From positions 124,001 to 188,000 of IMG/VR virus record IMGVR_UViG_3300028608_000006: a stretch of DNA of 64,000 nt, one strand, 5' to 3'. The notes under the pieces were generated by a model. The model was not told the DNA's origin. It did not search any database and worked only from the letters and a program-made list of their open reading frames with translations. This document shows positions 17,663 through 34,248 of the stretch, in pieces. Each line of letters opens with the position of its first letter. Position 1 is the first letter of the stretch. Position numbers and translations under genes: made by a program.

Positions 17663-18901
17663 ATGTACACTTATCGAAGGGCTGTTGGTATTAACCTACA
17701 GGTCCCCCGAGGAGAAGAGCTTTTAGATATTTCAGCGGTGCAGACAAAACAACTTTTTGCTTTGTACAGCGATCTCATCATCGTGGTGACTGACAGCTTT
17801 GCTAAACGTGACGTTGCTATCGACGCCGCTAAGTATCAAGACGAGCTTGGTCTCTTTGTTGGGACGATCCAGGCGTGGCTCAACACCAAGGCCACGGTCC
17901 CGTTGATCACCAGCAATACCCTGCCCGGAACCGAATACCGCTTTGTGACCACTCACGATATCCAGTACGAGTGGTTCACCCTCCTTCCAGGTGATGCCCG
18001 CATCTCTGAAGACCGGCAAAACCTGCTGACCAAAACCTCCGCTCCTGATATCCGTGTCGCCAAGACCGATAACACCGTGGTCGATTACGAAGCCTTGGTG
18101 AAGCGTTGCCTGTGGACCATCAACGGCCACTTGGTGCGTGCGGTCAAAGGTGATCGGAGTGTTTACCTGTTGAATGCCGGCAAGCACTTTAACGTGGATG
18201 ATAACGTCCATGTCAACTCGCTGAACTTCAACACGGTGTCCACCCTCAATACTTATCCCATTGCCGCTGAACAATTAGAGTTCATTGACCACGACACTTA
18301 CCGCTCTTTGCGAGTGGACTTGCCGGTGTCGCTGGTAGGTAAGACGGTGTGGATGTCGATCGGTGGTCGCTTGTACCTCAATGACGTGGTTCAGGTAAAC
18401 GGTCCTAAGGGTGTGACTATCCGGACTGAGAAAGTGGATTGGTTCTCGCGGATCTTTGACTCGAAAGAATTGATCGACCTGACCTCGGTGATTGATAAGG
18501 ATCGCCAAGTGGTTGGTAAAGACTTCTTCCAGACCGAAGAGTTCTTCACGAAGCTGCTGACGGACCCCTCGTCCTTCTTCATCATTCTGGACAACCCGCA
18601 TCTGTACGTGGATCTGCAACCGATCACGAGCTATGCTTACCCCTTTACGTTTCATACGGAAGAAACGAGACGTATCCCGTTGATGGTTGGTAATGGACTG
18701 CTGCCAAAATACTTCACCCGTAGACTTATTAACCGGAGGCTACTCGACATTGACATTGGCGTTCATAAGCGTTACCTCAACAAGACTACCGGTATCCACA
18801 ACGAGGGGGAACTCTTTCATGGATACACCAATCGGTATACCCCAAGCACCCTTCTAGAAGGGTATCTCCTTTACATACGCGGTCTGATTCAAGAGGCTTA
18901 A
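17663..18901 (+). CDS. Putative virion structural protein
   Basis: 412-aa beta-rich ORF with SD AAGGAG, lying among tail genes. Function not assignable from motifs. Confidence 0.6.
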   Translation: MYTYRRAVGINLQVPRGEELLDISAVQTKQLFALYSDLIIVVTDSFAKRDVAIDAAKYQDELGLFVGTIQAWLNTKATVPLITSNTLPGTEYRFVTTHDIQYEWFTLLPGDARISEDRQNLLTKTSAPDIRVAKTDNTVVDYEALVKRCLWTINGHLVRAVKGDRSVYLLNAGKHFNVDDNVHVNSLNFNTVSTLNTYPIAAEQLEFIDHDTYRSLRVDLPVSLVGKTVWMSIGGRLYLNDVVQVNGPKGVTIRTEKVDWFSRIFDSKELIDLTSVIDKDRQVVGKDFFQTEEFFTKLLTDPSSFFIILDNPHLYVDLQPITSYAYPFTFHTEETRRIPLMVGNGLLPKYFTRRLINRRLLDIDIGVHKRYLNKTTGIHNEGELFHGYTNRYTPSTLLEGYLLYIRGLIQEA

Positions 18902-18904
18902 CCT

Positions 18905-19450
18905 ATGGTGGCTTTACTTTCAGGTACTTTCTTTTCGGACAAGGTCCGATCAGCGATTACCATGTTCCTACTCACCCTGTTGCTCGGGCTGGCTTGCTTT
19001 CAGTATTTCTTCCCCCGGCACACCAACACACTCGATGCAGCAACGATCGAGTCCTTGCGTGACGTGCGCGGTCAGCTGGAACGTGTGGCAGACAACCTGG
19101 AAAAGTCCAGTGAGTCACAGGCCGCTCTGAACAGTACCCTAACCCGGCAACTTGATGTCGCCAGACAGGTGCAGAATGAAGGCTATGCGAATCTCCTTAA
19201 GCAGTATGGGCTTGATCTTTCTTTGCCTAGTGCTAATACCGATGACCCTTTCGGGCTGCGGACACCAGACCACAATCTCGGAAGGGAACTTGTACCTCCA
19301 AGCCCAGGCTCAACAGGTACAGATCAACTCTTACAAGACCCAGCTGAAGTCCACAAGGGAAAGACTGACCCAAGTCATCCCCCAGGTGCGGAGCGACAAT
19401 CCGGAACCACCCAAGTCGTTGCTGGCGGACCTCACGACGTATCTGGTTAA
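18905..19450 (+). CDS. Putative inner-membrane spanin (Rz-like)
   Basis: A single N-terminal TM (AITMFLLTLLLGLACFQYFF), then a coiled coil (LRDVRGQLERVADNLEKSSESQAALNSTLTRQL) and a Pro-rich tail; it overlaps a lipoprotein gene. Confidence 0.7.
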   Translation: MVALLSGTFFSDKVRSAITMFLLTLLLGLACFQYFFPRHTNTLDAATIESLRDVRGQLERVADNLEKSSESQAALNSTLTRQLDVARQVQNEGYANLLKQYGLDLSLPSANTDDPFGLRTPDHNLGRELVPPSPGSTGTDQLLQDPAEVHKGKTDPSHPPGAERQSGTTQVVAGGPHDVSG

Positions 19451-19655
19451 CAACGACTGCACCACGTTCCCCGCTACTATCAAGGATCAGTGTTACAAGG
19501 CGACTCGAGTCAAGTTGATTGAGATCACCCGATTACTTGATTCGACGAGGATGAACGAATACGCTGGACAGCGCACCATCGTTCAATTGATTGCGAGCAT
19601 CAACACGCTGATCGACAGCATGGCTGATACGCAACCTCTTAAACCTCCCGAGTAG
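19176..19655 (+). CDS. Putative outer-membrane lipoprotein spanin (Rz1-like)
   Basis: Start ATG 19176 (or 19185). Signal peptide MKAMRISLSSMGLIFLCLVLIPMT with lipobox LSG-C. Lies in the +1 frame and overlaps the upstream gene by 275 nt. Confidence 0.75.
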   Translation: MKAMRISLSSMGLIFLCLVLIPMTLSGCGHQTTISEGNLYLQAQAQQVQINSYKTQLKSTRERLTQVIPQVRSDNPEPPKSLLADLTTYLVNNDCTTFPATIKDQCYKATRVKLIEITRLLDSTRMNEYAGQRTIVQLIASINTLIDSMADTQPLKPPE

Positions 19656-19661
19656 CAAAAT

Positions 19662-19726
19662 GCGACATAACACCCTTACCCCTACGGAGCCCATAGAGGC
19701 GTCCGTAGGGGTAAGGGGTATGTTTG
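19662..19726. terminator. Bidirectional hairpin between convergent spanin and holin-candidate genes
   Basis: 16-bp arms cccttacccctacgga (19673-19688) and tccgtaggggtaaggg (19702-19717); GTATGTTTGC follows on + and TTATGTCGC follows on -. Confidence 0.85.
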
Positions 19727-19739
19727 CTTGTCCAGCCTT

Positions 19740-20162
19740 TTATTGCGGCGCAGGAGGGTCCTCAGGAGGCTTTGGATCCTTCGGTGCAATGGCTGTCGCC
19801 ACCCGACTACGGATCTTGTCCGCAACAGGTATCAATTCCATCAAGGTTGCAATGGTCTTGTTGGCGTTCATCCACGTCCAGGCTACAATGATCGGTCCCA
19901 CGTTCATAACGATCATGGAGATCTCGCTCGGCCATTGACCGTTCTTCTCAACCGAAACGTTTGTAGTCCAGGCGTTTGCTAATGCTGCAAGACAAAGAGT
20001 CCACACCGTCACCGCACCAAAGGTGTTGCGCAGCATGACACTCCACTTCCCGAACACCTCCCGCTCAATACCACCAGCGGGAGGAACCGGGGCTACTTCT
20101 TGAACGGGGAGGGTAGCAGGTGTCTCGCTAGCTCCTCCCGGCTCAGTATCGACAGTGGCCAT
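19740..20162 (-). CDS. Two-TM membrane protein, candidate class II holin
   Basis: Hydrophobic segments TFGAVTVWTLCLAALANAW and SMIVMNVGPIIVAWTWM, a charged C-terminus (KIRSR...KDPKPPED), and adjacency to the spanin-like pair. Confidence 0.5.
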   Translation of the reverse strand: MATVDTEPGGASETPATLPVQEVAPVPPAGGIEREVFGKWSVMLRNTFGAVTVWTLCLAALANAWTTNVSVEKNGQWPSEISMIVMNVGPIIVAWTWMNANKTIATLMELIPVADKIRSRVATAIAPKDPKPPEDPPAPQ

Positions 20163-20749
20163 TCGTGATATACCCCGTAGTCTTTTGCAATCTGTTCACA
20201 ACGGTACAGACATACGGCGCCGGCGTCAGTGGTGTGTTCATCCATCAACGAGATATCTAAATCACCAGCATCAAGTCCACCGTACTCCTTAAGGCCTTTT
20301 TGTACATCTTCTTTGGTTGTACCACGGAAGTTTGCTTTCACAATTTCCTTGGCTTGGTTCGGCAATACATACGACAGGTGAACATCATTCTCGATAAACG
20401 ACTGTCGTAGTAAAGCAACGCATTGAATCAACTGCTTGAACGTCAGAGGGGACATGCCCATGAAGTTATCTTCGCAGATCCCAGTGTCCGGTTCATGAAT
20501 AGCCACCAGAGACTTAAGGCTGCGAAACAAGCCGTAGGTCCGGGCCAAGAGTTTAGTCCCGGCCAAGTCATCGAACTGCACGGGAATGTCGTAGAGTACC
20601 TTCTCGCCGTAGATCGTGTTGGCATACACCAACTTAAACTTCTCCGGCTTCTCGATGTTCACATCTACGACAAACACACCCATGTTGGTAGTCGAGGGGT
20701 CAATCCCCATTACCCGCACGATACCTGGATGTCTTAGACCCTTAGGCAT
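20093..20749 (-). CDS. ruvC: RuvC-like Holliday junction resolvase
   Basis: VMGIDPSTTNMG (catalytic D), GICEDNF (catalytic E), KEDVQ, and DEHTTDAGAV (D..D). Confidence 0.9.
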   Translation of the reverse strand: MPKGLRHPGIVRVMGIDPSTTNMGVFVVDVNIEKPEKFKLVYANTIYGEKVLYDIPVQFDDLAGTKLLARTYGLFRSLKSLVAIHEPDTGICEDNFMGMSPLTFKQLIQCVALLRQSFIENDVHLSYVLPNQAKEIVKANFRGTTKEDVQKGLKEYGGLDAGDLDISLMDEHTTDAGAVCLYRCEQIAKDYGVYHEWPLSILSREELARHLLPSPFKK

Positions 20750-21348
20750 ATGAAGCCGAGTTTAGACCCAGAGAGGATCTGTACCACGGCAACCATGTCA
20801 GGAGAATCTTCCAGCAGGAACTCATCCGGTGCATCTTCGGAGGTCCCTTTGTAGACGAGCTTAAAGCCGCCTGCACAGAGATCACCGATAGTACCTGACT
20901 TCCACTGGCCCAGTACGCGGTAGTTGTTGAGCAGGGTCGCCAGCTTCCAAGCCACAGTGTTATCCGTGTACTCAGTACCGTAGACATTGCCCACACCCAC
21001 TTCATCCAGAAACTCCAGCTCGTCGGCGCTATGCACGGCAACGGGGGATGTCAGCCAAGGGTATTCGGCGGATGCAGTGAGGATGTTGTCGATCACCAGT
21101 TCGTCTTCAACTGCTTTCACAGCTTCTGCAACGTTGGTGAAGGTAACCACAACAGTACCTAGGTTGAAGTGAATCAATTCCAGATACAGCTTACCGTCAA
21201 CACCGCGGAAAGCTTGAGACTGTTTAAAGTCACCAGCGTTCAGCTGTGTCTGATAGAACGTGTTGCACAGAGACACCGCCTCAGAGGACGTAGTCCCTTC
21301 TTTAAGGGGAAGGTGTGTCTCCCCTTTCAGAATCGCTGGGGTTTCCAT
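20734..21348 (-). CDS. Hypothetical, probably virion protein
   Basis: 204-aa ORF within a tightly coupled structural operon. Confidence 0.6.
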   Translation of the reverse strand: METPAILKGETHLPLKEGTTSSEAVSLCNTFYQTQLNAGDFKQSQAFRGVDGKLYLELIHFNLGTVVVTFTNVAEAVKAVEDELVIDNILTASAEYPWLTSPVAVHSADELEFLDEVGVGNVYGTEYTDNTVAWKLATLLNNYRVLGQWKSGTIGDLCAGGFKLVYKGTSEDAPDEFLLEDSPDMVAVVQILSGSKLGFICLRV

Positions 21349-21351
21349 GGA

Positions 21352-22299
21352 TTAGTTTCCTTGGCCGGTAGTCGTACCAGTTGCGTTGGTGTGCAACAGC
21401 ATAGGCTCGCTGGCGCCGTGATCGTAGGCCAGTTGTACCTTGGTGTTGGTGATGGCGTTACGACCGTCACGTTCAGTTACGTAGTGAGCATAAACAGCGC
21501 TCAATACTTCGGTGTACTTGATGGTAGCGCCGCCGGCGATCTGACCGTCGAACTGAGTGTCGATACCCCAGGCCACGCCCACTTCGTTGATCGAAGCAAA
21601 GCTGGTGTCACCGAACTTGAGTTTGCACGCTTGAGCGCACTCGTTCAGGTCCTGTTGAGTCATCGAGCAATCCAGGATCGCCGAGCTGTTCAGGTAGGTG
21701 TCGGAGATCGGCACCGCGTTGACCGAAGTGAAGTCGATCGGTTGTGGATCGAACAGGTCGTCCTTCGTCGGTACGTACGGCTTGGCGTTCTCGTTACCCG
21801 CGTCGTCACGGGTGATCTTGTTCACCGAAGGGTCGTAGCTGTCGAAGTTGATTACCTTGAGGTAATACACCGCGTAGACTTCGCCATCCGGGAAGGTTTC
21901 GATCACACGCATGCGATACTTCAGGCGGTTGATGTTGTCCAGGTCGCTACCGATAGGACGGCAGATAAACGGGATCGGCACGAACAGGTTCATGTCGATT
22001 GGCTGGTGCTGGTTCACTTTCAGCTTGGTGGTGCCAATGCTGGTGCGGCCATCACAATCGGACCCGCGGATACCAATACCAAAGAACTTCAGTTCAAAAT
22101 CACGGCCATTCTTCAGACCGATGGACTCATCACCCATGATGTTGTAGCGTTCATTCAGGGTGGTGTACTGGGGAAGGTTGATCTTTTGATTGGTAGCGCA
22201 GCACTTCCCAATCAGGTTACCGAATGCCGTGTTGGTAACTGTTTGGGTAGGAACCTCCGAACGGTTCTGGTCTTGTACTTCAGCGCTAGTAATAGTCAT
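21352..22299 (-). CDS. Conserved virion structural (tail/baseplate) protein
   Basis: 315-aa ORF with strong codon bias and SD AGGAA, in the structural operon. Family assignment from context only. Confidence 0.6.
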   Translation of the reverse strand: MTITSAEVQDQNRSEVPTQTVTNTAFGNLIGKCCATNQKINLPQYTTLNERYNIMGDESIGLKNGRDFELKFFGIGIRGSDCDGRTSIGTTKLKVNQHQPIDMNLFVPIPFICRPIGSDLDNINRLKYRMRVIETFPDGEVYAVYYLKVINFDSYDPSVNKITRDDAGNENAKPYVPTKDDLFDPQPIDFTSVNAVPISDTYLNSSAILDCSMTQQDLNECAQACKLKFGDTSFASINEVGVAWGIDTQFDGQIAGGATIKYTEVLSAVYAHYVTERDGRNAITNTKVQLAYDHGASEPMLLHTNATGTTTGQGN

Positions 22300-31908: not shown

Positions 31909-34248
31909 TTAATCAAGCGCCAGCAGAACCAGCGGTTGTTTACGAGAGACGTGACGAAGAGTCGCCATGTTCTTGTCTACAGCCGAGTAGCTCCAGAGCC
32001 ACAGGTTGTCGCTGGTGGTGAAGCAGAGCAGCTTGTCCGTTGTATCGAACGAGGCGTCTTCACCCATCGTCGGATCGAATGATTTCTCGATCAGGTCGAA
32101 GTATTCTGGGAAGGTACTGCGTTTCAGTTGGATCGGTAGGTTGGAATCTTGGTAGATCGGACCGCCACGGTTATTGATGAAAGTGAACATGAGTGGGCGT
32201 TCGAGGATTAGTTCTTGCGCGTACTTGATCTGCTCAATTGCAGACAGTTCGCCATCAGCAGGTTGGGACGGATGGTTGTACGTGAAGATCTTCAGTTCTT
32301 CAAGCAGGTAGTTCTCTGAATCGTTGGAGTTGAGCAACCGGAACATGATCGAGTCAGTACGTTCCAGATGTTCGTCCAGCGCCTCGTGGTCCTTCACAAT
32401 GCTGTCAACCGACAGGTAGTGAGCTTCGTGAGGGTAGCTGTCATAACCGCCGGAGTTGATGAAGAAGTTATTGATGGTCGCGGTCAGGCGGCTGTCAATG
32501 AACGACATCAGTTCACGGTCGATGATGTTCTGGCGGAAGTAAGCCAGTGTTGCTCGCATTGCTGCGAAGAAGGTGGGACGGGTCGACATGTCGCTGTCTT
32601 TAAACAGGAACGGCAGATCCTGGAACAAACGGATCTTGTCTTCTGGGCGCGCACAAGCAAATGTGTCCCAGACTTTGGTGTTGAAGCTCACCGCGTTAGC
32701 TTTGGTGAAGTTCTGGCTGACACGCTGGTTGACATTGATCAAGGTCGATTCCAGATCTTTCGAGCTGGCGAACAAGAGTTGGTCTTTCAGGGTGATGACC
32801 GGGATTTTGTCTTTCTCTTCCAGGGTCTGGCAAGTCTCGAGCGAGATTGTCAGCGCGGCGTCACCTTTCAAACCGGAGACGTCTTCCACAGCGGAAGTTT
32901 CAACTTGCAGGAAGTCACCACCTTCATCAGACAGACGGGGTAGCAGCTTCGTTGGGTCAGTCAATACGGTTGGCATATCAAGGCCCTCGGCACGGACGAT
33001 TCGGCTGAACCATCCTGAGTCAGCGTCAAGATCGATGATAACGATTCGGAAGCAATGCTCCATCACCGTTTCTTCTTTCTTCATTTCTGGGTGCTTAACA
33101 AACGCGTGTTGAATCTTCTTCCAGTCAGTCTCGGTAATCAAGTAATGATTTGGTTTACCGATGTTGTAGAAGAATCGTGCGAGCTGGAACTCTCCTTTGT
33201 TTTTGGGTGTAAGGTTGTTCAGGTCATTACGGATTTTGTTCCAGTTGTGTTCAGCCTGTGCGAAGGTTTCCTGAGGATCCTGTTGCACTGGGCGATCCCA
33301 AGTGTTGCCCGAATAGTCCCGAGCGTTCTTCTGGATCATGTGAAACAGGTCACGGGTGTCCGACATGTCAGCTTGACCATGCATACCCAGACCACCGCCG
33401 TACAGGTATTCAGCCCCTGACTCGTAGCGGTTCTGTTGGAGATCAGCGCGAACAGCCGCTTTGATCTCAAACTTCAAATCGGCGTACGGGTTGTTAAGAC
33501 CGAATACTGCACACGCCGAGCTGATGACATCTTTGTAGTTTTCCAGGTTAGGCATCTTGCTCGCCAAGTCTTTCGGCAATTGACGAGCATGCATGTTACC
33601 TTCTGCCGTCTTCATCAACCAGTTCACCATCTCCATCAGGAGAACGGAACGAATTGCGATTTCAGCAGCACCTAGGTATTGGTTAGCGGTTAACTCTTCC
33701 CGACCAGTTTCCTGACGGACGTGAATCAAGCGCCAACCAAACAGAGGAGCTGCGGCAATCGCCACCGGGCGGTTAAATTCCTGGTGGCGTTGGAACATGG
33801 TAACAAACGCATCACGAACTGGACAAGGATTGCCCTGCTCATTACGACGAAAGCTTTCCACAGTTTGCCGGTATACTTCGTAGAACTTACCGGAACGGGA
33901 GATGATGTGTTGCATGAAGATTACGTTGAACTGCACCACCGAAGCTGCGTGATACTGCATCGAATCTTGATCAGGACCTGACGAACTCAGGATCTCCTGC
34001 ATGCCGGAGTCGTACACGTTAGTGCCGTACGACTCCCACTTGATACCACCTCCCATTGCGGCGGTGCTGCCTTCGACCATCTGGCGAAACATCGCCATTG
34101 GATCCATGGCCTGACCCATTGCATTGGTGGTCGCGCCTGTCATGCCGGCACGCGCACCCATACCTGGAGCTGTACCCATTGTTGGAACGATTACAGATGC
34201 ACCGCCTGGTTTGATCATGCTGCCAGGACCGCCGTTACCTTGTTGCAT
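31909..34248 (-). CDS. Conserved hypothetical protein downstream of the nvRNAP subunit
   Basis: 779 aa with a Met/Gly/Ala-rich low-complexity N-terminus; co-transcribed with the RNAP subunit. Confidence 0.7.
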   Translation of the reverse strand: MQQGNGGPGSMIKPGGASVIVPTMGTAPGMGARAGMTGATTNAMGQAMDPMAMFRQMVEGSTAAMGGGIKWESYGTNVYDSGMQEILSSSGPDQDSMQYHAASVVQFNVIFMQHIISRSGKFYEVYRQTVESFRRNEQGNPCPVRDAFVTMFQRHQEFNRPVAIAAAPLFGWRLIHVRQETGREELTANQYLGAAEIAIRSVLLMEMVNWLMKTAEGNMHARQLPKDLASKMPNLENYKDVISSACAVFGLNNPYADLKFEIKAAVRADLQQNRYESGAEYLYGGGLGMHGQADMSDTRDLFHMIQKNARDYSGNTWDRPVQQDPQETFAQAEHNWNKIRNDLNNLTPKNKGEFQLARFFYNIGKPNHYLITETDWKKIQHAFVKHPEMKKEETVMEHCFRIVIIDLDADSGWFSRIVRAEGLDMPTVLTDPTKLLPRLSDEGGDFLQVETSAVEDVSGLKGDAALTISLETCQTLEEKDKIPVITLKDQLLFASSKDLESTLINVNQRVSQNFTKANAVSFNTKVWDTFACARPEDKIRLFQDLPFLFKDSDMSTRPTFFAAMRATLAYFRQNIIDRELMSFIDSRLTATINNFFINSGGYDSYPHEAHYLSVDSIVKDHEALDEHLERTDSIMFRLLNSNDSENYLLEELKIFTYNHPSQPADGELSAIEQIKYAQELILERPLMFTFINNRGGPIYQDSNLPIQLKRSTFPEYFDLIEKSFDPTMGEDASFDTTDKLLCFTTSDNLWLWSYSAVDKNMATLRHVSRKQPLVLLALD

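What the first reader, a model, noticed from the sequence alone, without database searches (positions are those of the whole stretch)
18905..19655. Overlapping Rz/Rz1-like spanin pair in a phiKZ-like phage, with an unusually large o-spanin
Seen: a type-II TM + coiled-coil gene is overlapped for 275 nt in the +1 frame by a lipoprotein gene (LSG-C28). The lipoprotein is about 132 aa mature, helical, with a Pro linker (NPEPPK) and two Cys (DCTTFPATIKDQC). Established: lambda Rz1 is embedded in the +1 frame of Rz and is only about 40 aa mature. Inference: this is the outer-membrane disruption system of this jumbo phage, and I do not recall such genes being routinely annotated in this clade. The i-spanin TM ends in GLAC, a near-lipobox, so a two-lipoprotein variant is possible.
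Basis: partly seen in the sequence, partly recalled or inferred. Interest (0 to 1): 0.7.

Follow-up and report, generated by a model that had tools for sequence, protein, structure and literature searches.

The report
Overlapped EL-type spanin gene pair
Two overlapping genes of a soil phiKZ-like jumbo phage encode an inner-membrane helical protein and the phage's only lipoprotein, the expected pair that breaks the host outer membrane at lysis; the same pair was already catalogued for phage EL, so this is a real but ordinary new member.

Summary
Gene 18905-19450 (181 aa) has an N-terminal transmembrane helix and one long helix. Gene 19176-19655 (159 aa, LSG|C28) overlaps it by 275 nt in the +1 frame. 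Both frames code: substitutions in relatives fall on the third codon position of the i-frame upstream and of the o-frame from 19260 on. This ORF is the only one in the 231,788-bp genome with a lipoprotein signal.

The spanin reading is supported by architecture and by homology. The pair is orthologous to phage EL gp111 and its overlapped lipoprotein gene, listed as spanins in SpaninDB (Kongari 2018). [quoted passage not shown] A large helical o-spanin (132 aa mature) is rare among spanins but typical of this clade (EL 127, OBP 132).

The "GLAC" near-lipobox is not conserved, so the two-lipoprotein idea is rejected.

Two points are new here. The pair shows no detectable homology to the tested phiKZ gp141/141.1 spanins. 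The last ~60 residues of the i-spanin evolve as a passenger of the o-spanin frame.

No member of this family has been tested. It is a new member of a known kind, of modest interest.

The parts
18891..18896 (+). Shine-Dalgarno AAGAGG of the i-spanin gene, 8 nt before the ATG, inside the end of the upstream 412-aa structural gene (stop 18899-18901)
   Evidence: read from sequence
18905..19450 (+). i-spanin gene, 181 aa, EL gp111 orthologue
   Evidence: ORF; phrog_21243 1.5e-23; 35% identity to EL gp111 and 27% to RisingSun gp96 by tblastn; i-frame third-position periodicity in 18905-19175
18929..19009 (+). N-terminal transmembrane helix (AF2 helix residues 9-35; hydrophobic core centred on residues 22-28), N-in/C-out signal anchor; contains the non-conserved GLAC
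   Evidence: Kyte-Doolittle maximum 2.0 at residue 27; AF2 helix 9-35; Cys31 not conserved
19037..19207 (+). single long periplasmic alpha-helix of the i-spanin (residues 45-101, about 8.5 nm if straight), ending in the conserved GY..LL..YG.D motif
   Evidence: AF2 H45-101, pLDDT 60-81; invariant Y94, G102
19208..19447 (+). P/G/S/T-rich disordered C-terminal tail of the i-spanin (residues 102-181); from about residue 119 it evolves as a passenger of the o-spanin frame and its length varies among relatives (proteins of 130-192 aa)
   Evidence: AF2 pLDDT below 50; composition P 14%, G 13%; i-frame position 3 is the least variable in 19260-19447; identity 0.44-0.46 against 0.73-0.77 for the o-frame on the same DNA
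19176..19655 (+). o-spanin gene, 159 aa precursor, +1 frame, overlapping the i-spanin gene by 275 nt
   Evidence: ORF; phrog_17307 2e-34; 47% identity to the EL o-spanin, 36% to Miami o-spanin CPT_Miami_051; o-frame periodicity
19176..19259 (+). type-II (lipoprotein) signal peptide with lipobox L-S-G-C; Cys28 codon at 19257-19259; Gly at +2, so not an inner-membrane retention signal
   Evidence: sequence; Cys invariant in 19 of 19 homologues and in all N-complete library hits; the only such signal in the genome
19272..19373 (+). o-spanin N-terminal helix (residues 33-66), the best conserved part (YLQAQAQQVQIN)
   Evidence: AF2; alignments
19374..19421 (+). Pro-rich linker (residues 67-82, includes NPEPPK; P79 invariant)
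   Evidence: AF2 coil; alignment
19422..19619 (+). o-spanin C-terminal three-helix domain (H83-92, H100-123, H126-148) with invariant Cys95 (19458-19460) and Cys106 (19491-19493)
   Evidence: AF2 pLDDT 80-90; invariant columns; Cys pair present in every homologue that covers the region
19673..19718 (.). strong GC-rich hairpin in the 84-nt gap between the o-spanin gene and the convergent 140-aa membrane-protein gene; probable bidirectional terminator
   Evidence: MFE -47.1 kcal/mol, z -7.25 against shuffles; Miami has an annotated terminator at the same place; the simple T-run scan did not flag it

Best explanation
This is the two-component spanin of an EL/RisingSun-related, phiKZ-like jumbo phage from soil.

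The 181-aa product is the i-spanin. It is anchored in the inner membrane by one N-terminal helix and projects a single helix of about 57 residues into the periplasm, followed by a disordered tail.

The 159-aa product is the o-spanin. It is exported, lipidated on Cys28 and sorted to the inner leaflet of the outer membrane. From there it projects a 34-residue helix, a Pro-rich linker and a three-helix domain that carries a conserved Cys pair.

By analogy with lambda Rz/Rz1 and phiKZ gp141/141.1, the two are inferred to join across the periplasm. They would be held in check by the peptidoglycan mesh and, once the endolysin has removed it, destroy the outer membrane, probably by fusing it with the inner membrane.

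Shown here: both frames code, the membrane signals, the predicted folds, conservation, synteny, and orthology to catalogued spanins.

Inferred: lipidation, localisation, the complex and the lytic role. Also inferred is that here the o-spanin supplies much of the helical mass that Rz supplies in lambda, and that the i-spanin tail beyond about residue 119-138 is dispensable.
For: - ORFs, overlap and frame.
- It is the only lipoprotein signal in the genome.
- Codon-position periodicity is seen for each frame in its own region.
- Lipobox Cys, C95 and C106 are invariant in 19 homologues. A search of 1.84e9 proteins gave 69 family representatives, and every N-complete one has the lipobox.
- AF2 models: i-spanin has a TM helix 9-35 and a helix 45-101, then disorder; the o-spanin is helical.
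- Orthologues with the same gene order (structural protein -> i -> o <- membrane protein <- RuvC) occur in EL, RisingSun and Miami.
- EL gp111 and its overlapped lipoprotein are listed as an overlapped spanin pair in SpaninDB, with the same 127-aa mature o-spanin that I derive.
- The Miami orthologues are annotated i-spanin and o-spanin with a LipoP SPII site.
- Other relatives are annotated 'Rz1-like'.
- The analogous overlapped pair of phiKZ complements lambda RzamRz1am (PMC12894885).
- Fold search finds only same-family phage lipoproteins, so no competing function appears.
- No other spanin candidate exists in the genome.
Against: - No member of this family has been tested experimentally.
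- There is no detectable homology to any validated spanin: no Pfam or NCBIfam spanin family matches, and hhalign against phiKZ gp141/141.1 gives probability 0.5-11%, covering only the signal or TM segments.
- The complex prediction gave no answer (score 0.01), so the i-o contact is not supported by modelling.
- The i-spanin has no periplasmic Cys and only one helix, unlike lambda Rz.
- The pair is not in a lysis cassette. The endolysin candidate lies about 110 kb away, and no phiKZ-type holin or regulator is found.
Confidence: 0.85

Rival explanations
1. The lipoprotein and the membrane protein act on the envelope for another purpose, for example superinfection exclusion or receptor masking (like the T5 Llp lipoprotein), or as membrane-associated morphogenesis or virion factors. 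In that case outer-membrane disruption is done by something else.
For: The pair lies directly after a virion structural gene, among tail and structural genes, not next to the endolysin. In 201phi2-1 the analogous phiKZ-type i-spanin and holin homologues were recorded as virion proteins by mass spectrometry (record note). No family member has been tested.
Against: The family is conserved in phages of at least ten gammaproteobacterial host genera, including Pseudomonas, Erwinia, Klebsiella, Aeromonas and Shewanella. That argues against a receptor-specific function. The obligatory pairing of a type-II membrane protein gene with an overlapped lipoprotein gene is the spanin signature (Kongari 2018). 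The genome holds no other lipoprotein that could serve as o-spanin or u-spanin.
Confidence: 0.08
2. The 181-aa protein is a class-III-topology holin or antiholin (one TMD, N-in, C-out, as in T4 T). The lipoprotein would be its periplasmic regulator rather than an outer-membrane disruptor.
For: It has a single N-terminal TMD with a large periplasmic part. No phiKZ-type holin was found in the genome.
Against: The periplasmic part is one long helix plus disorder, not a globular domain. A better holin candidate, a conserved 2-TMD small protein, sits next door. Orthologues are annotated as spanins by a lysis-specialist group.
Confidence: 0.04
3. Two-lipoprotein variant: the i-spanin is itself lipidated at Cys31 (GLAC), so both subunits are lipoproteins.
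For: GLAC is present at residues 28-31, at the end of a hydrophobic stretch.
Against: Gly at -3 violates the lipobox. An Asp lies in the n-region. AF2 places the Cys inside the TM helix 9-35. The Cys occurs in only 3 of the 9 aligned family members, window included (the window and two close relatives); it is absent in EL, RisingSun, Miami, L007, L008 and L014. My lipoprotein scan does not pick it up.
Confidence: 0.01
4. The +1 ORF is a chance open frame and only one gene is real.
For: None beyond the fact that automatic gene callers often report only one of the two genes.
Against: There is o-frame third-position periodicity through overlap and non-overlap alike, and i-frame periodicity upstream. 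Functional residues are invariant. There are 69 library representatives.
Confidence: 0.01

Closest known systems
Pseudomonas phage EL gp111 (i-spanin) and its unannotated overlapped o-spanin, as listed in SpaninDB (Kongari et al. 2018, BMC Bioinformatics 19:326); orthologues in Erwinia phage RisingSun (gp96/gp95) and Klebsiella phage Miami (CPT_Miami_052/051, annotated i-spanin and o-spanin)
   Same: These are direct homologues: the i-spanin is 35% and the o-spanin 47% identical to EL. They share the overlapped +1 architecture, the neighbours (412-aa structural protein upstream; convergent 2-TMD protein and RuvC downstream), the lipobox, the Cys pair, the helical o-spanin (127 aa mature in EL, 132 here) and a single-helix i-spanin with a P/G/S-rich tail.
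   Different: It is only a divergent orthologue from an uncultivated soil phage. The i-spanin tail is longer (181 aa against 130-153) and so the overlap is longer (275 nt against 134-227 nt). None of these pairs has been tested experimentally.
phiKZ gp141/gp141.1 spanins (Manohar et al. 2026, Sci Rep 16:5840)
   Same: It comes from the same kind of phage: a homologue of phiKZ gp180, annotated 'RNA polymerase beta subunit', is present. It has the same overlapped +1 architecture, a TM i-spanin and a fairly large lipoprotein (100 aa mature), and the same genomic neighbourhood next to the RuvC-like gene (gp140) and the gp139 homologue. The phiKZ pair complements lambda RzamRz1am.
   Different: No detectable sequence or profile homology exists outside the signal and TM segments. 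The phiKZ o-spanin starts with a Pro-rich extended segment and has widely spaced Cys. The phiKZ genes form a co-oriented cassette with holin, regulator and endolysin, whereas here the pair converges on a different small membrane protein and the endolysin is about 110 kb away.
Lambda Rz/Rz1 (prototype two-component spanin)
   Same: It has a type-II inner-membrane subunit with a helical periplasmic domain, plus an outer-membrane lipoprotein encoded in the +1 frame of the same DNA. Periplasmic Cys are available for disulfides. The inferred role is the last step of lysis.
   Different: Rz1 is embedded and about 40 aa mature, Pro-rich and unstructured; here the o-spanin is overlapped, 132 aa and mostly helical. 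Rz has two coiled-coil helices and periplasmic Cys; here there is one helix, a disordered tail and no periplasmic Cys. No sequence homology was found (Pfam scan).

Membership tests
Two-component spanin (functional class, criteria of Kongari et al. 2018) | i-spanin: integral inner-membrane protein with a single N-terminal TMD, N-in/C-out | tested here: met
   One hydrophobic segment (KD19 maximum 2.0, residues about 17-36) and AF2 helix 9-35, with no other TMD. Orientation is inferred from K13/R15 on the N side.
Two-component spanin (functional class, criteria of Kongari et al. 2018) | i-spanin periplasmic domain dominated by alpha-helix or coiled coil | tested here: met
   AF2 shows a single helix 45-101, and a/d positions are 64% hydrophobic. 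There is only one helix; single-helix i-spanins are noted by Kongari (EE36P1).
Two-component spanin (functional class, criteria of Kongari et al. 2018) | o-spanin: lipoprotein signal with lipobox Cys and an outer-membrane sorting signal (no Asp at +2) | tested here: met
   LSG|C28 with Gly at +2. The Cys is invariant in homologues and +2 is never Asp (G/S/T/A/N/Q/K/V). Lipidation itself was not tested.
Two-component spanin (functional class, criteria of Kongari et al. 2018) | o-spanin gene is the next gene downstream of the i-spanin gene, embedded, overlapped or adjacent | tested here: met
   275-nt overlap in the +1 frame. The same arrangement holds in all 8 loci examined, plus Miami.
Two-component spanin (functional class, criteria of Kongari et al. 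2018) | Periplasmic Cys available for intermolecular disulfides | tested here: inconclusive
   The o-spanin has invariant C95 and C106, and the i-spanin has none. Whether the pair forms an intra- or inter-molecular bond cannot be told from sequence.
Two-component spanin (functional class, criteria of Kongari et al. 2018) | i- and o-spanin bind each other across the periplasm | tested here: inconclusive
   The complex prediction scored 0.01, below the mark. The tool states that this is no evidence either way.
Two-component spanin (functional class, criteria of Kongari et al. 2018) | Required for outer-membrane disruption (complements lambda Rz-am Rz1-am; spherical-cell phenotype when absent) | not testable with these tools
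   This needs a bench test. It has been done only for the non-homologous phiKZ pair.
EL-type spanin sequence family (SpaninDB EL entries; PHROG 21243 + 17307; Miami CPT_Miami_052/051) | Significant sequence homology of both subunits | tested here: met
   PHROG hits at 1.5e-23 and 2e-34. tblastn to EL gives 1.6e-25 (i) and 2.3e-39 (o); to the Miami o-spanin 4.5e-23. The Miami i-spanin aligns at 26% with the shared Y..L..YG motif but is not a significant tblastn hit on its own.
EL-type spanin sequence family (SpaninDB EL entries; PHROG 21243 + 17307; Miami CPT_Miami_052/051) | Conserved gene neighbourhood | tested here: met
   The 412-aa structural protein, the 2-TMD protein, RuvC, the 204-aa and the 315-aa proteins are all syntenic with EL, RisingSun and Miami.
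phiKZ-type spanins (gp141/gp141.1 family) | Sequence or profile homology to gp141 and gp141.1 | tested here: not met
   tblastn found nothing. hhalign gave probability 3-11%, limited to TM and signal segments. Mature-domain profile against a six-phage phiKZ-type profile gave probability 0.5%.
Lambda Rz / Rz1 families (Pfam) | Match to curated Rz or Rz1 models | tested here: not met
   No Pfam or NCBIfam spanin model matched at E up to 0.1.

The most novel reading that the evidence does not exclude
EL-type spanins would be a distinct structural solution. The outer-membrane subunit carries most of the ordered helical mass: a 34-residue helix, a linker and a disulfide-bearing three-helix domain. 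The inner-membrane subunit contributes a single helix, and its C-terminal 60-80 residues are an unconstrained read-on of the o-spanin frame. The i-o contact and the collapse that fuses the membranes would then be built differently from lambda Rz/Rz1. In that case phiKZ-like phages would have acquired two unrelated spanin families at the same locus next to RuvC.
Probability: 0.35. Interest if true: 0.5.

Novelty: new member of a known kind. Interest (0 to 1): 0.3.

Why it matters
It completes the lysis-gene annotation of an uncultivated soil jumbo phage. It also shows that automatic gene calling systematically loses one partner of this overlapped pair or truncates the lipoprotein.

More generally, it marks out a spanin family of at least 69 sequence clusters, found in phages of at least ten gammaproteobacterial host genera, including Pseudomonas, Erwinia, Klebsiella, Aeromonas and Shewanella. 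The family is unrelated in sequence to the only tested jumbo-phage spanins (phiKZ) and has an unusual division of structure between the two subunits.

Testing one member, most simply EL gp111 and its partner, would validate the annotation for the whole group. It would also show whether a large helical o-spanin works the same way as the small Pro-rich Rz1.

Tried and rejected
1. A megablast of the 3.2-kb region against GenBank phages found no match, so there is no close cultured relative.
2. Pfam, NCBIfam, PDB-sequence and BFVD fold searches found no family or fold other than same-family phage lipoproteins.
3. The i-o complex prediction with family alignments scored 0.01, a 'no answer'. I do not use it as evidence either way.
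4. Homology to the phiKZ spanins was tried by tblastn, profile-sequence and profile-profile comparison. Nothing was found outside hydrophobic signals.
5. phiKZ holin gp142 and regulator gp143 were searched in the phage's own genome, with no match. The neighbouring 2-TMD protein is not related to gp142.
6. The two-lipoprotein (GLAC) idea is rejected on non-conservation.
I dropped that row and did not resend it.
8. Metatranscriptome evidence: one 246-nt contig (19037-19282) spans the i/o junction, but the tool warns that DNA can be present in such libraries. This is only weak support for transcription.
9. The simple terminator scan did not flag the intergenic hairpin because it lacks a clean T-run. 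Folding shows it is exceptionally stable.

Full report
**What is there**

The window is bases 124001-188000 of a 231,788-bp IMG/VR virus record. On the + strand an ATG-initiated ORF runs 18905-19450 (181 aa). A second runs 19176-19655 (159 aa from the first ATG). The second is in the +1 frame and shares 275 nt with the first.

The first gene starts 3 nt after the stop of a 412-aa structural-protein gene and has an AAGAGG Shine-Dalgarno 8 nt upstream. The second begins MKAMRISLSSMGLIFLCLVLIPMTLSG|C, a basic n-region, hydrophobic core and lipobox with Cys28 and Gly at +2. Its mature part is 132 aa and contains NPEPPK and the Cys pair C95/C106.

**Is it more than chance?**

Four tests say yes.
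- I scanned all six frames of the whole genome for ORFs of at least 50 aa with a lipoprotein-type signal. This ORF was the only hit.
- Both ORFs match PHROG families of unknown function: phrog_21243 at 1.5e-23 and phrog_17307 at 2e-34.
- I aligned the locus with five relatives (87-56% o-spanin identity) and counted differences by codon position. In 18905-19175 the third position of the i-frame varies most (0.43-0.52, against 0.13-0.29 at positions 1-2). In 19260-19652 the third position of the o-frame varies most (0.38-0.41, against 0.11-0.21). Both genes are therefore under purifying selection in their own frames.
- In 19 aligned homologues the lipobox Cys, C95 and C106 are invariant. A profile search of 1.84 billion representative proteins found 69 family members. 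Every one that reaches the N-terminus has the x-x-[GAS]-C lipobox, and every one that covers that region has the Cys pair.

**An added finding on the overlap**

The overlap divides into two parts.
- In its first 84 nt (19176-19259) the o-frame encodes the signal peptide and the i-frame encodes the conserved GY..LL..YG.D motif. Here both frames show constraint.
- In 19260-19447 the i-frame third position is the least variable (0.13). This is the reverse of what a constrained frame shows.

On that same DNA the o-spanin is 73-77% identical to two relatives while the i-spanin tail is 44-46% identical. The i-spanin stop codon also wanders, giving proteins of 130 aa (Miami), 138, 153, 164, 181, 183 and 192 aa.

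AlphaFold2 with the family alignment gives the i-spanin a TM helix 9-35 and one long helix 45-101, with pLDDT below 50 for residues 106-111 and 119-181 and at most 52 as 10-residue block means across 101-120. The tail beyond about residue 119 therefore looks like a passenger of the o-spanin frame.

The o-spanin model (pLDDT 72) has a helix 33-66, a Pro-rich coil 67-82 and three helices (83-92, 100-123, 126-148).

**Relatives and what they are called**

tblastn finds the o-spanin in 54 phage records from hosts including Pseudomonas, Erwinia, Klebsiella, Aeromonas, Shewanella, Kosakonia, Serratia, Photobacterium, Edwardsiella and Stenotrophomonas. The i-spanin diverges faster and is found in 13 records.

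Gene order is conserved in EL, RisingSun and Miami: 412-aa structural protein -> i -> o, then convergent 2-TMD protein <- RuvC-like <- 204-aa <- 315-aa.

Most records say 'hypothetical protein'. Klebsiella phage Miami, however, annotates the orthologues as i-spanin and o-spanin with a LipoP SPII site. KPN8 says 'putative' spanins, and N1M2, ZPAH34 and SXP01 say 'Rz1-like'.

Decisively, the SpaninDB tables of Kongari et al. 2018 list EL gp111 as an overlapped i-spanin, with an unannotated overlapped o-spanin of 127 mature residues and 54% helix. That is exactly the ORF I derive. They also list phiKZ, 201phi2-1 and OBP.

In 2026 the phiKZ pair gp141/141.1 was shown to complement lambda RzamRz1am (PMC12894885).

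**Size**

In SpaninDB, mature o-spanins are mostly 42-100 aa. In the part of the table I read (all overlapped and separated and some embedded o-spanins), only Xp15 (108), EL (127), OBP (132), Ea35-70 (148), Kappa (167), CR5 (134), B40-8 (112), nt-1 (106) and phiR1-37 (102) exceed 100. It is the rule, though, for this family.

**Relation to phiKZ**

The genome is phiKZ-like: it has a homologue of phiKZ gp180, annotated 'RNA polymerase beta subunit', at 30% identity and E 4e-69. The RuvC-like and 315-aa neighbours match phiKZ gp140 and gp139, which directly precede gp141.

The spanins themselves, however, show no detectable homology. tblastn finds nothing. Profile-sequence hhalign matches only the TM and signal segments at 3-11% probability. 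A mature-domain profile-profile comparison against six phiKZ-type o-spanins gives 0.5% probability.

The own genome also lacks detectable homologues of the phiKZ holin gp142 and regulator gp143. Its PG_binding_1 endolysin candidate lies about 110 kb away. The phiKZ 'lysis cassette' is therefore not conserved here. The two spanin families at the RuvC-adjacent locus are either unrelated or diverged beyond recognition.

**Mechanism**

Membrane signals, folds, conservation and orthology are shown here. The rest is inferred from the established spanin model (lambda Rz/Rz1, and phiKZ as reviewed):
- The i-spanin sits in the inner membrane.
- The o-spanin is lipidated at Cys28 and sorted to the outer membrane.
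- The two meet in the periplasm, are restrained by the murein mesh, and destroy the outer membrane after the endolysin has acted.

Straight-helix lengths are about 8.5 nm for the i-spanin and about 5 nm for the o-spanin, plus a linker and a domain of about 4 nm. This is compatible with spanning the periplasm, but it is arithmetic, not a test. The complex prediction returned 'no answer'.

**The GLAC idea**

Cys31 lies inside the predicted TM helix. Gly at -3 breaks the lipobox, and an Asp lies in the n-region. The Cys is present only in the window and two close relatives. EL, RisingSun, Miami and three other relatives have V/A, L, G, W or F there. The idea is rejected.

**Other evidence**

The phage or close variants occur in soil, rhizosphere, wetland, digester and wastewater metagenomes from independent studies. 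One metatranscriptome holds a 246-nt contig across the i/o junction, which is weak support for transcription.

A very stable hairpin (19673-19718, -47 kcal/mol, z -7.25) separates the pair from the convergent gene. It sits where Miami has an annotated terminator.

**Verdict**

This is a real, correctly interpreted, overlapped two-component spanin pair. It is a new, divergent member of the already catalogued but untested EL-type family, not a new kind of system.

Two modest points are new: the lack of homology to the validated phiKZ spanins, and the passenger-tail, helical-o-spanin architecture.

Interest 0.3. Confidence in the spanin assignment 0.85.

Noticed in passing
window 19740-20162 (-): A conserved 140-aa protein with two predicted TMDs, a conserved N-terminal GG(I/L)ERE.FGKW motif and a Pro-rich C-terminus converges on the spanin pair in every relative (EL ORF109, RisingSun gp94, Miami gp050; 'putative membrane channel' in Kc263). 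It matches phrog_14084 (unknown function). It is not related to the phiKZ holin gp142 (hhalign probability 0.1%). Protein-atlas feature hits lean to small phage holin clusters, but only at 0.81-0.84, which is lead level. It is a candidate class-II holin of the EL-type phages.
   Followed up: partly
window 19673-19718: An exceptionally stable hairpin (-47.1 kcal/mol, z -7.25) lies in the 84-nt gap between the convergent genes. It is a probable bidirectional terminator, and the simple T-run scan missed it.
   Followed up: partly
G000:C1 about 32420-33295 (= L011:919-1794, - strand), outside the window: A 291-aa ORF has a PG_binding_1 domain (E 8e-8) and a C-terminal region matching baseplate-hub or lysozyme-like PHROGs. 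It is the likely endolysin, about 110 kb from the spanins, so there is no phiKZ-style lysis cassette in this phage.
   Followed up: partly
L012-L015 (Logan/ENA contigs) and library proteins P0022-P0064: Automatic gene callers call the o-spanin but leave the i-spanin uncalled (gaps at L012 1218-1500 and L013 1114-1396). In many clusters they start the o-spanin at an internal Met, giving products such as 'MITGC...' or ones lacking the signal peptide altogether. This is a systematic annotation loss for the overlapped pair.
   Followed up: yes
window 20093-22299 (-) compared with L006 (phiKZ 143009-144471): The RuvC-like gene (20093-20749) and the 315-aa DUF7208 gene (21352-22299) are homologues of phiKZ gp140 and gp139, which directly precede the phiKZ spanins. 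The spanin locus is thus positionally conserved next to RuvC although the spanin sequences are unrelated and the orientation differs.
   Followed up: partly
L019 (201phi2-1 157983-159682): In 201phi2-1 the homologues of the phiKZ i-spanin, holin and lysis regulator (gp226-228) are annotated as virion proteins identified by mass spectrometry. This is odd for lysis proteins and is unexplained.
   Followed up: no
window 18979-18983: Metagenome variant X3 carries a 1-nt insertion after 18979 and a 1-nt deletion at 18983, 4 nt apart, inside the i-spanin TM segment. The two changes compensate, so the frame is kept, which is consistent with selection on the i-frame. In X4 only the deletion was listed.
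   Followed up: no
window 18929-18949 (i-spanin residues 9-15): The cytoplasmic N-terminal motif FFSDK(V/L)R is conserved from the window to RisingSun but is absent in EL. Spanin N-termini are usually short and unconserved. Its function is unknown.
   Followed up: no
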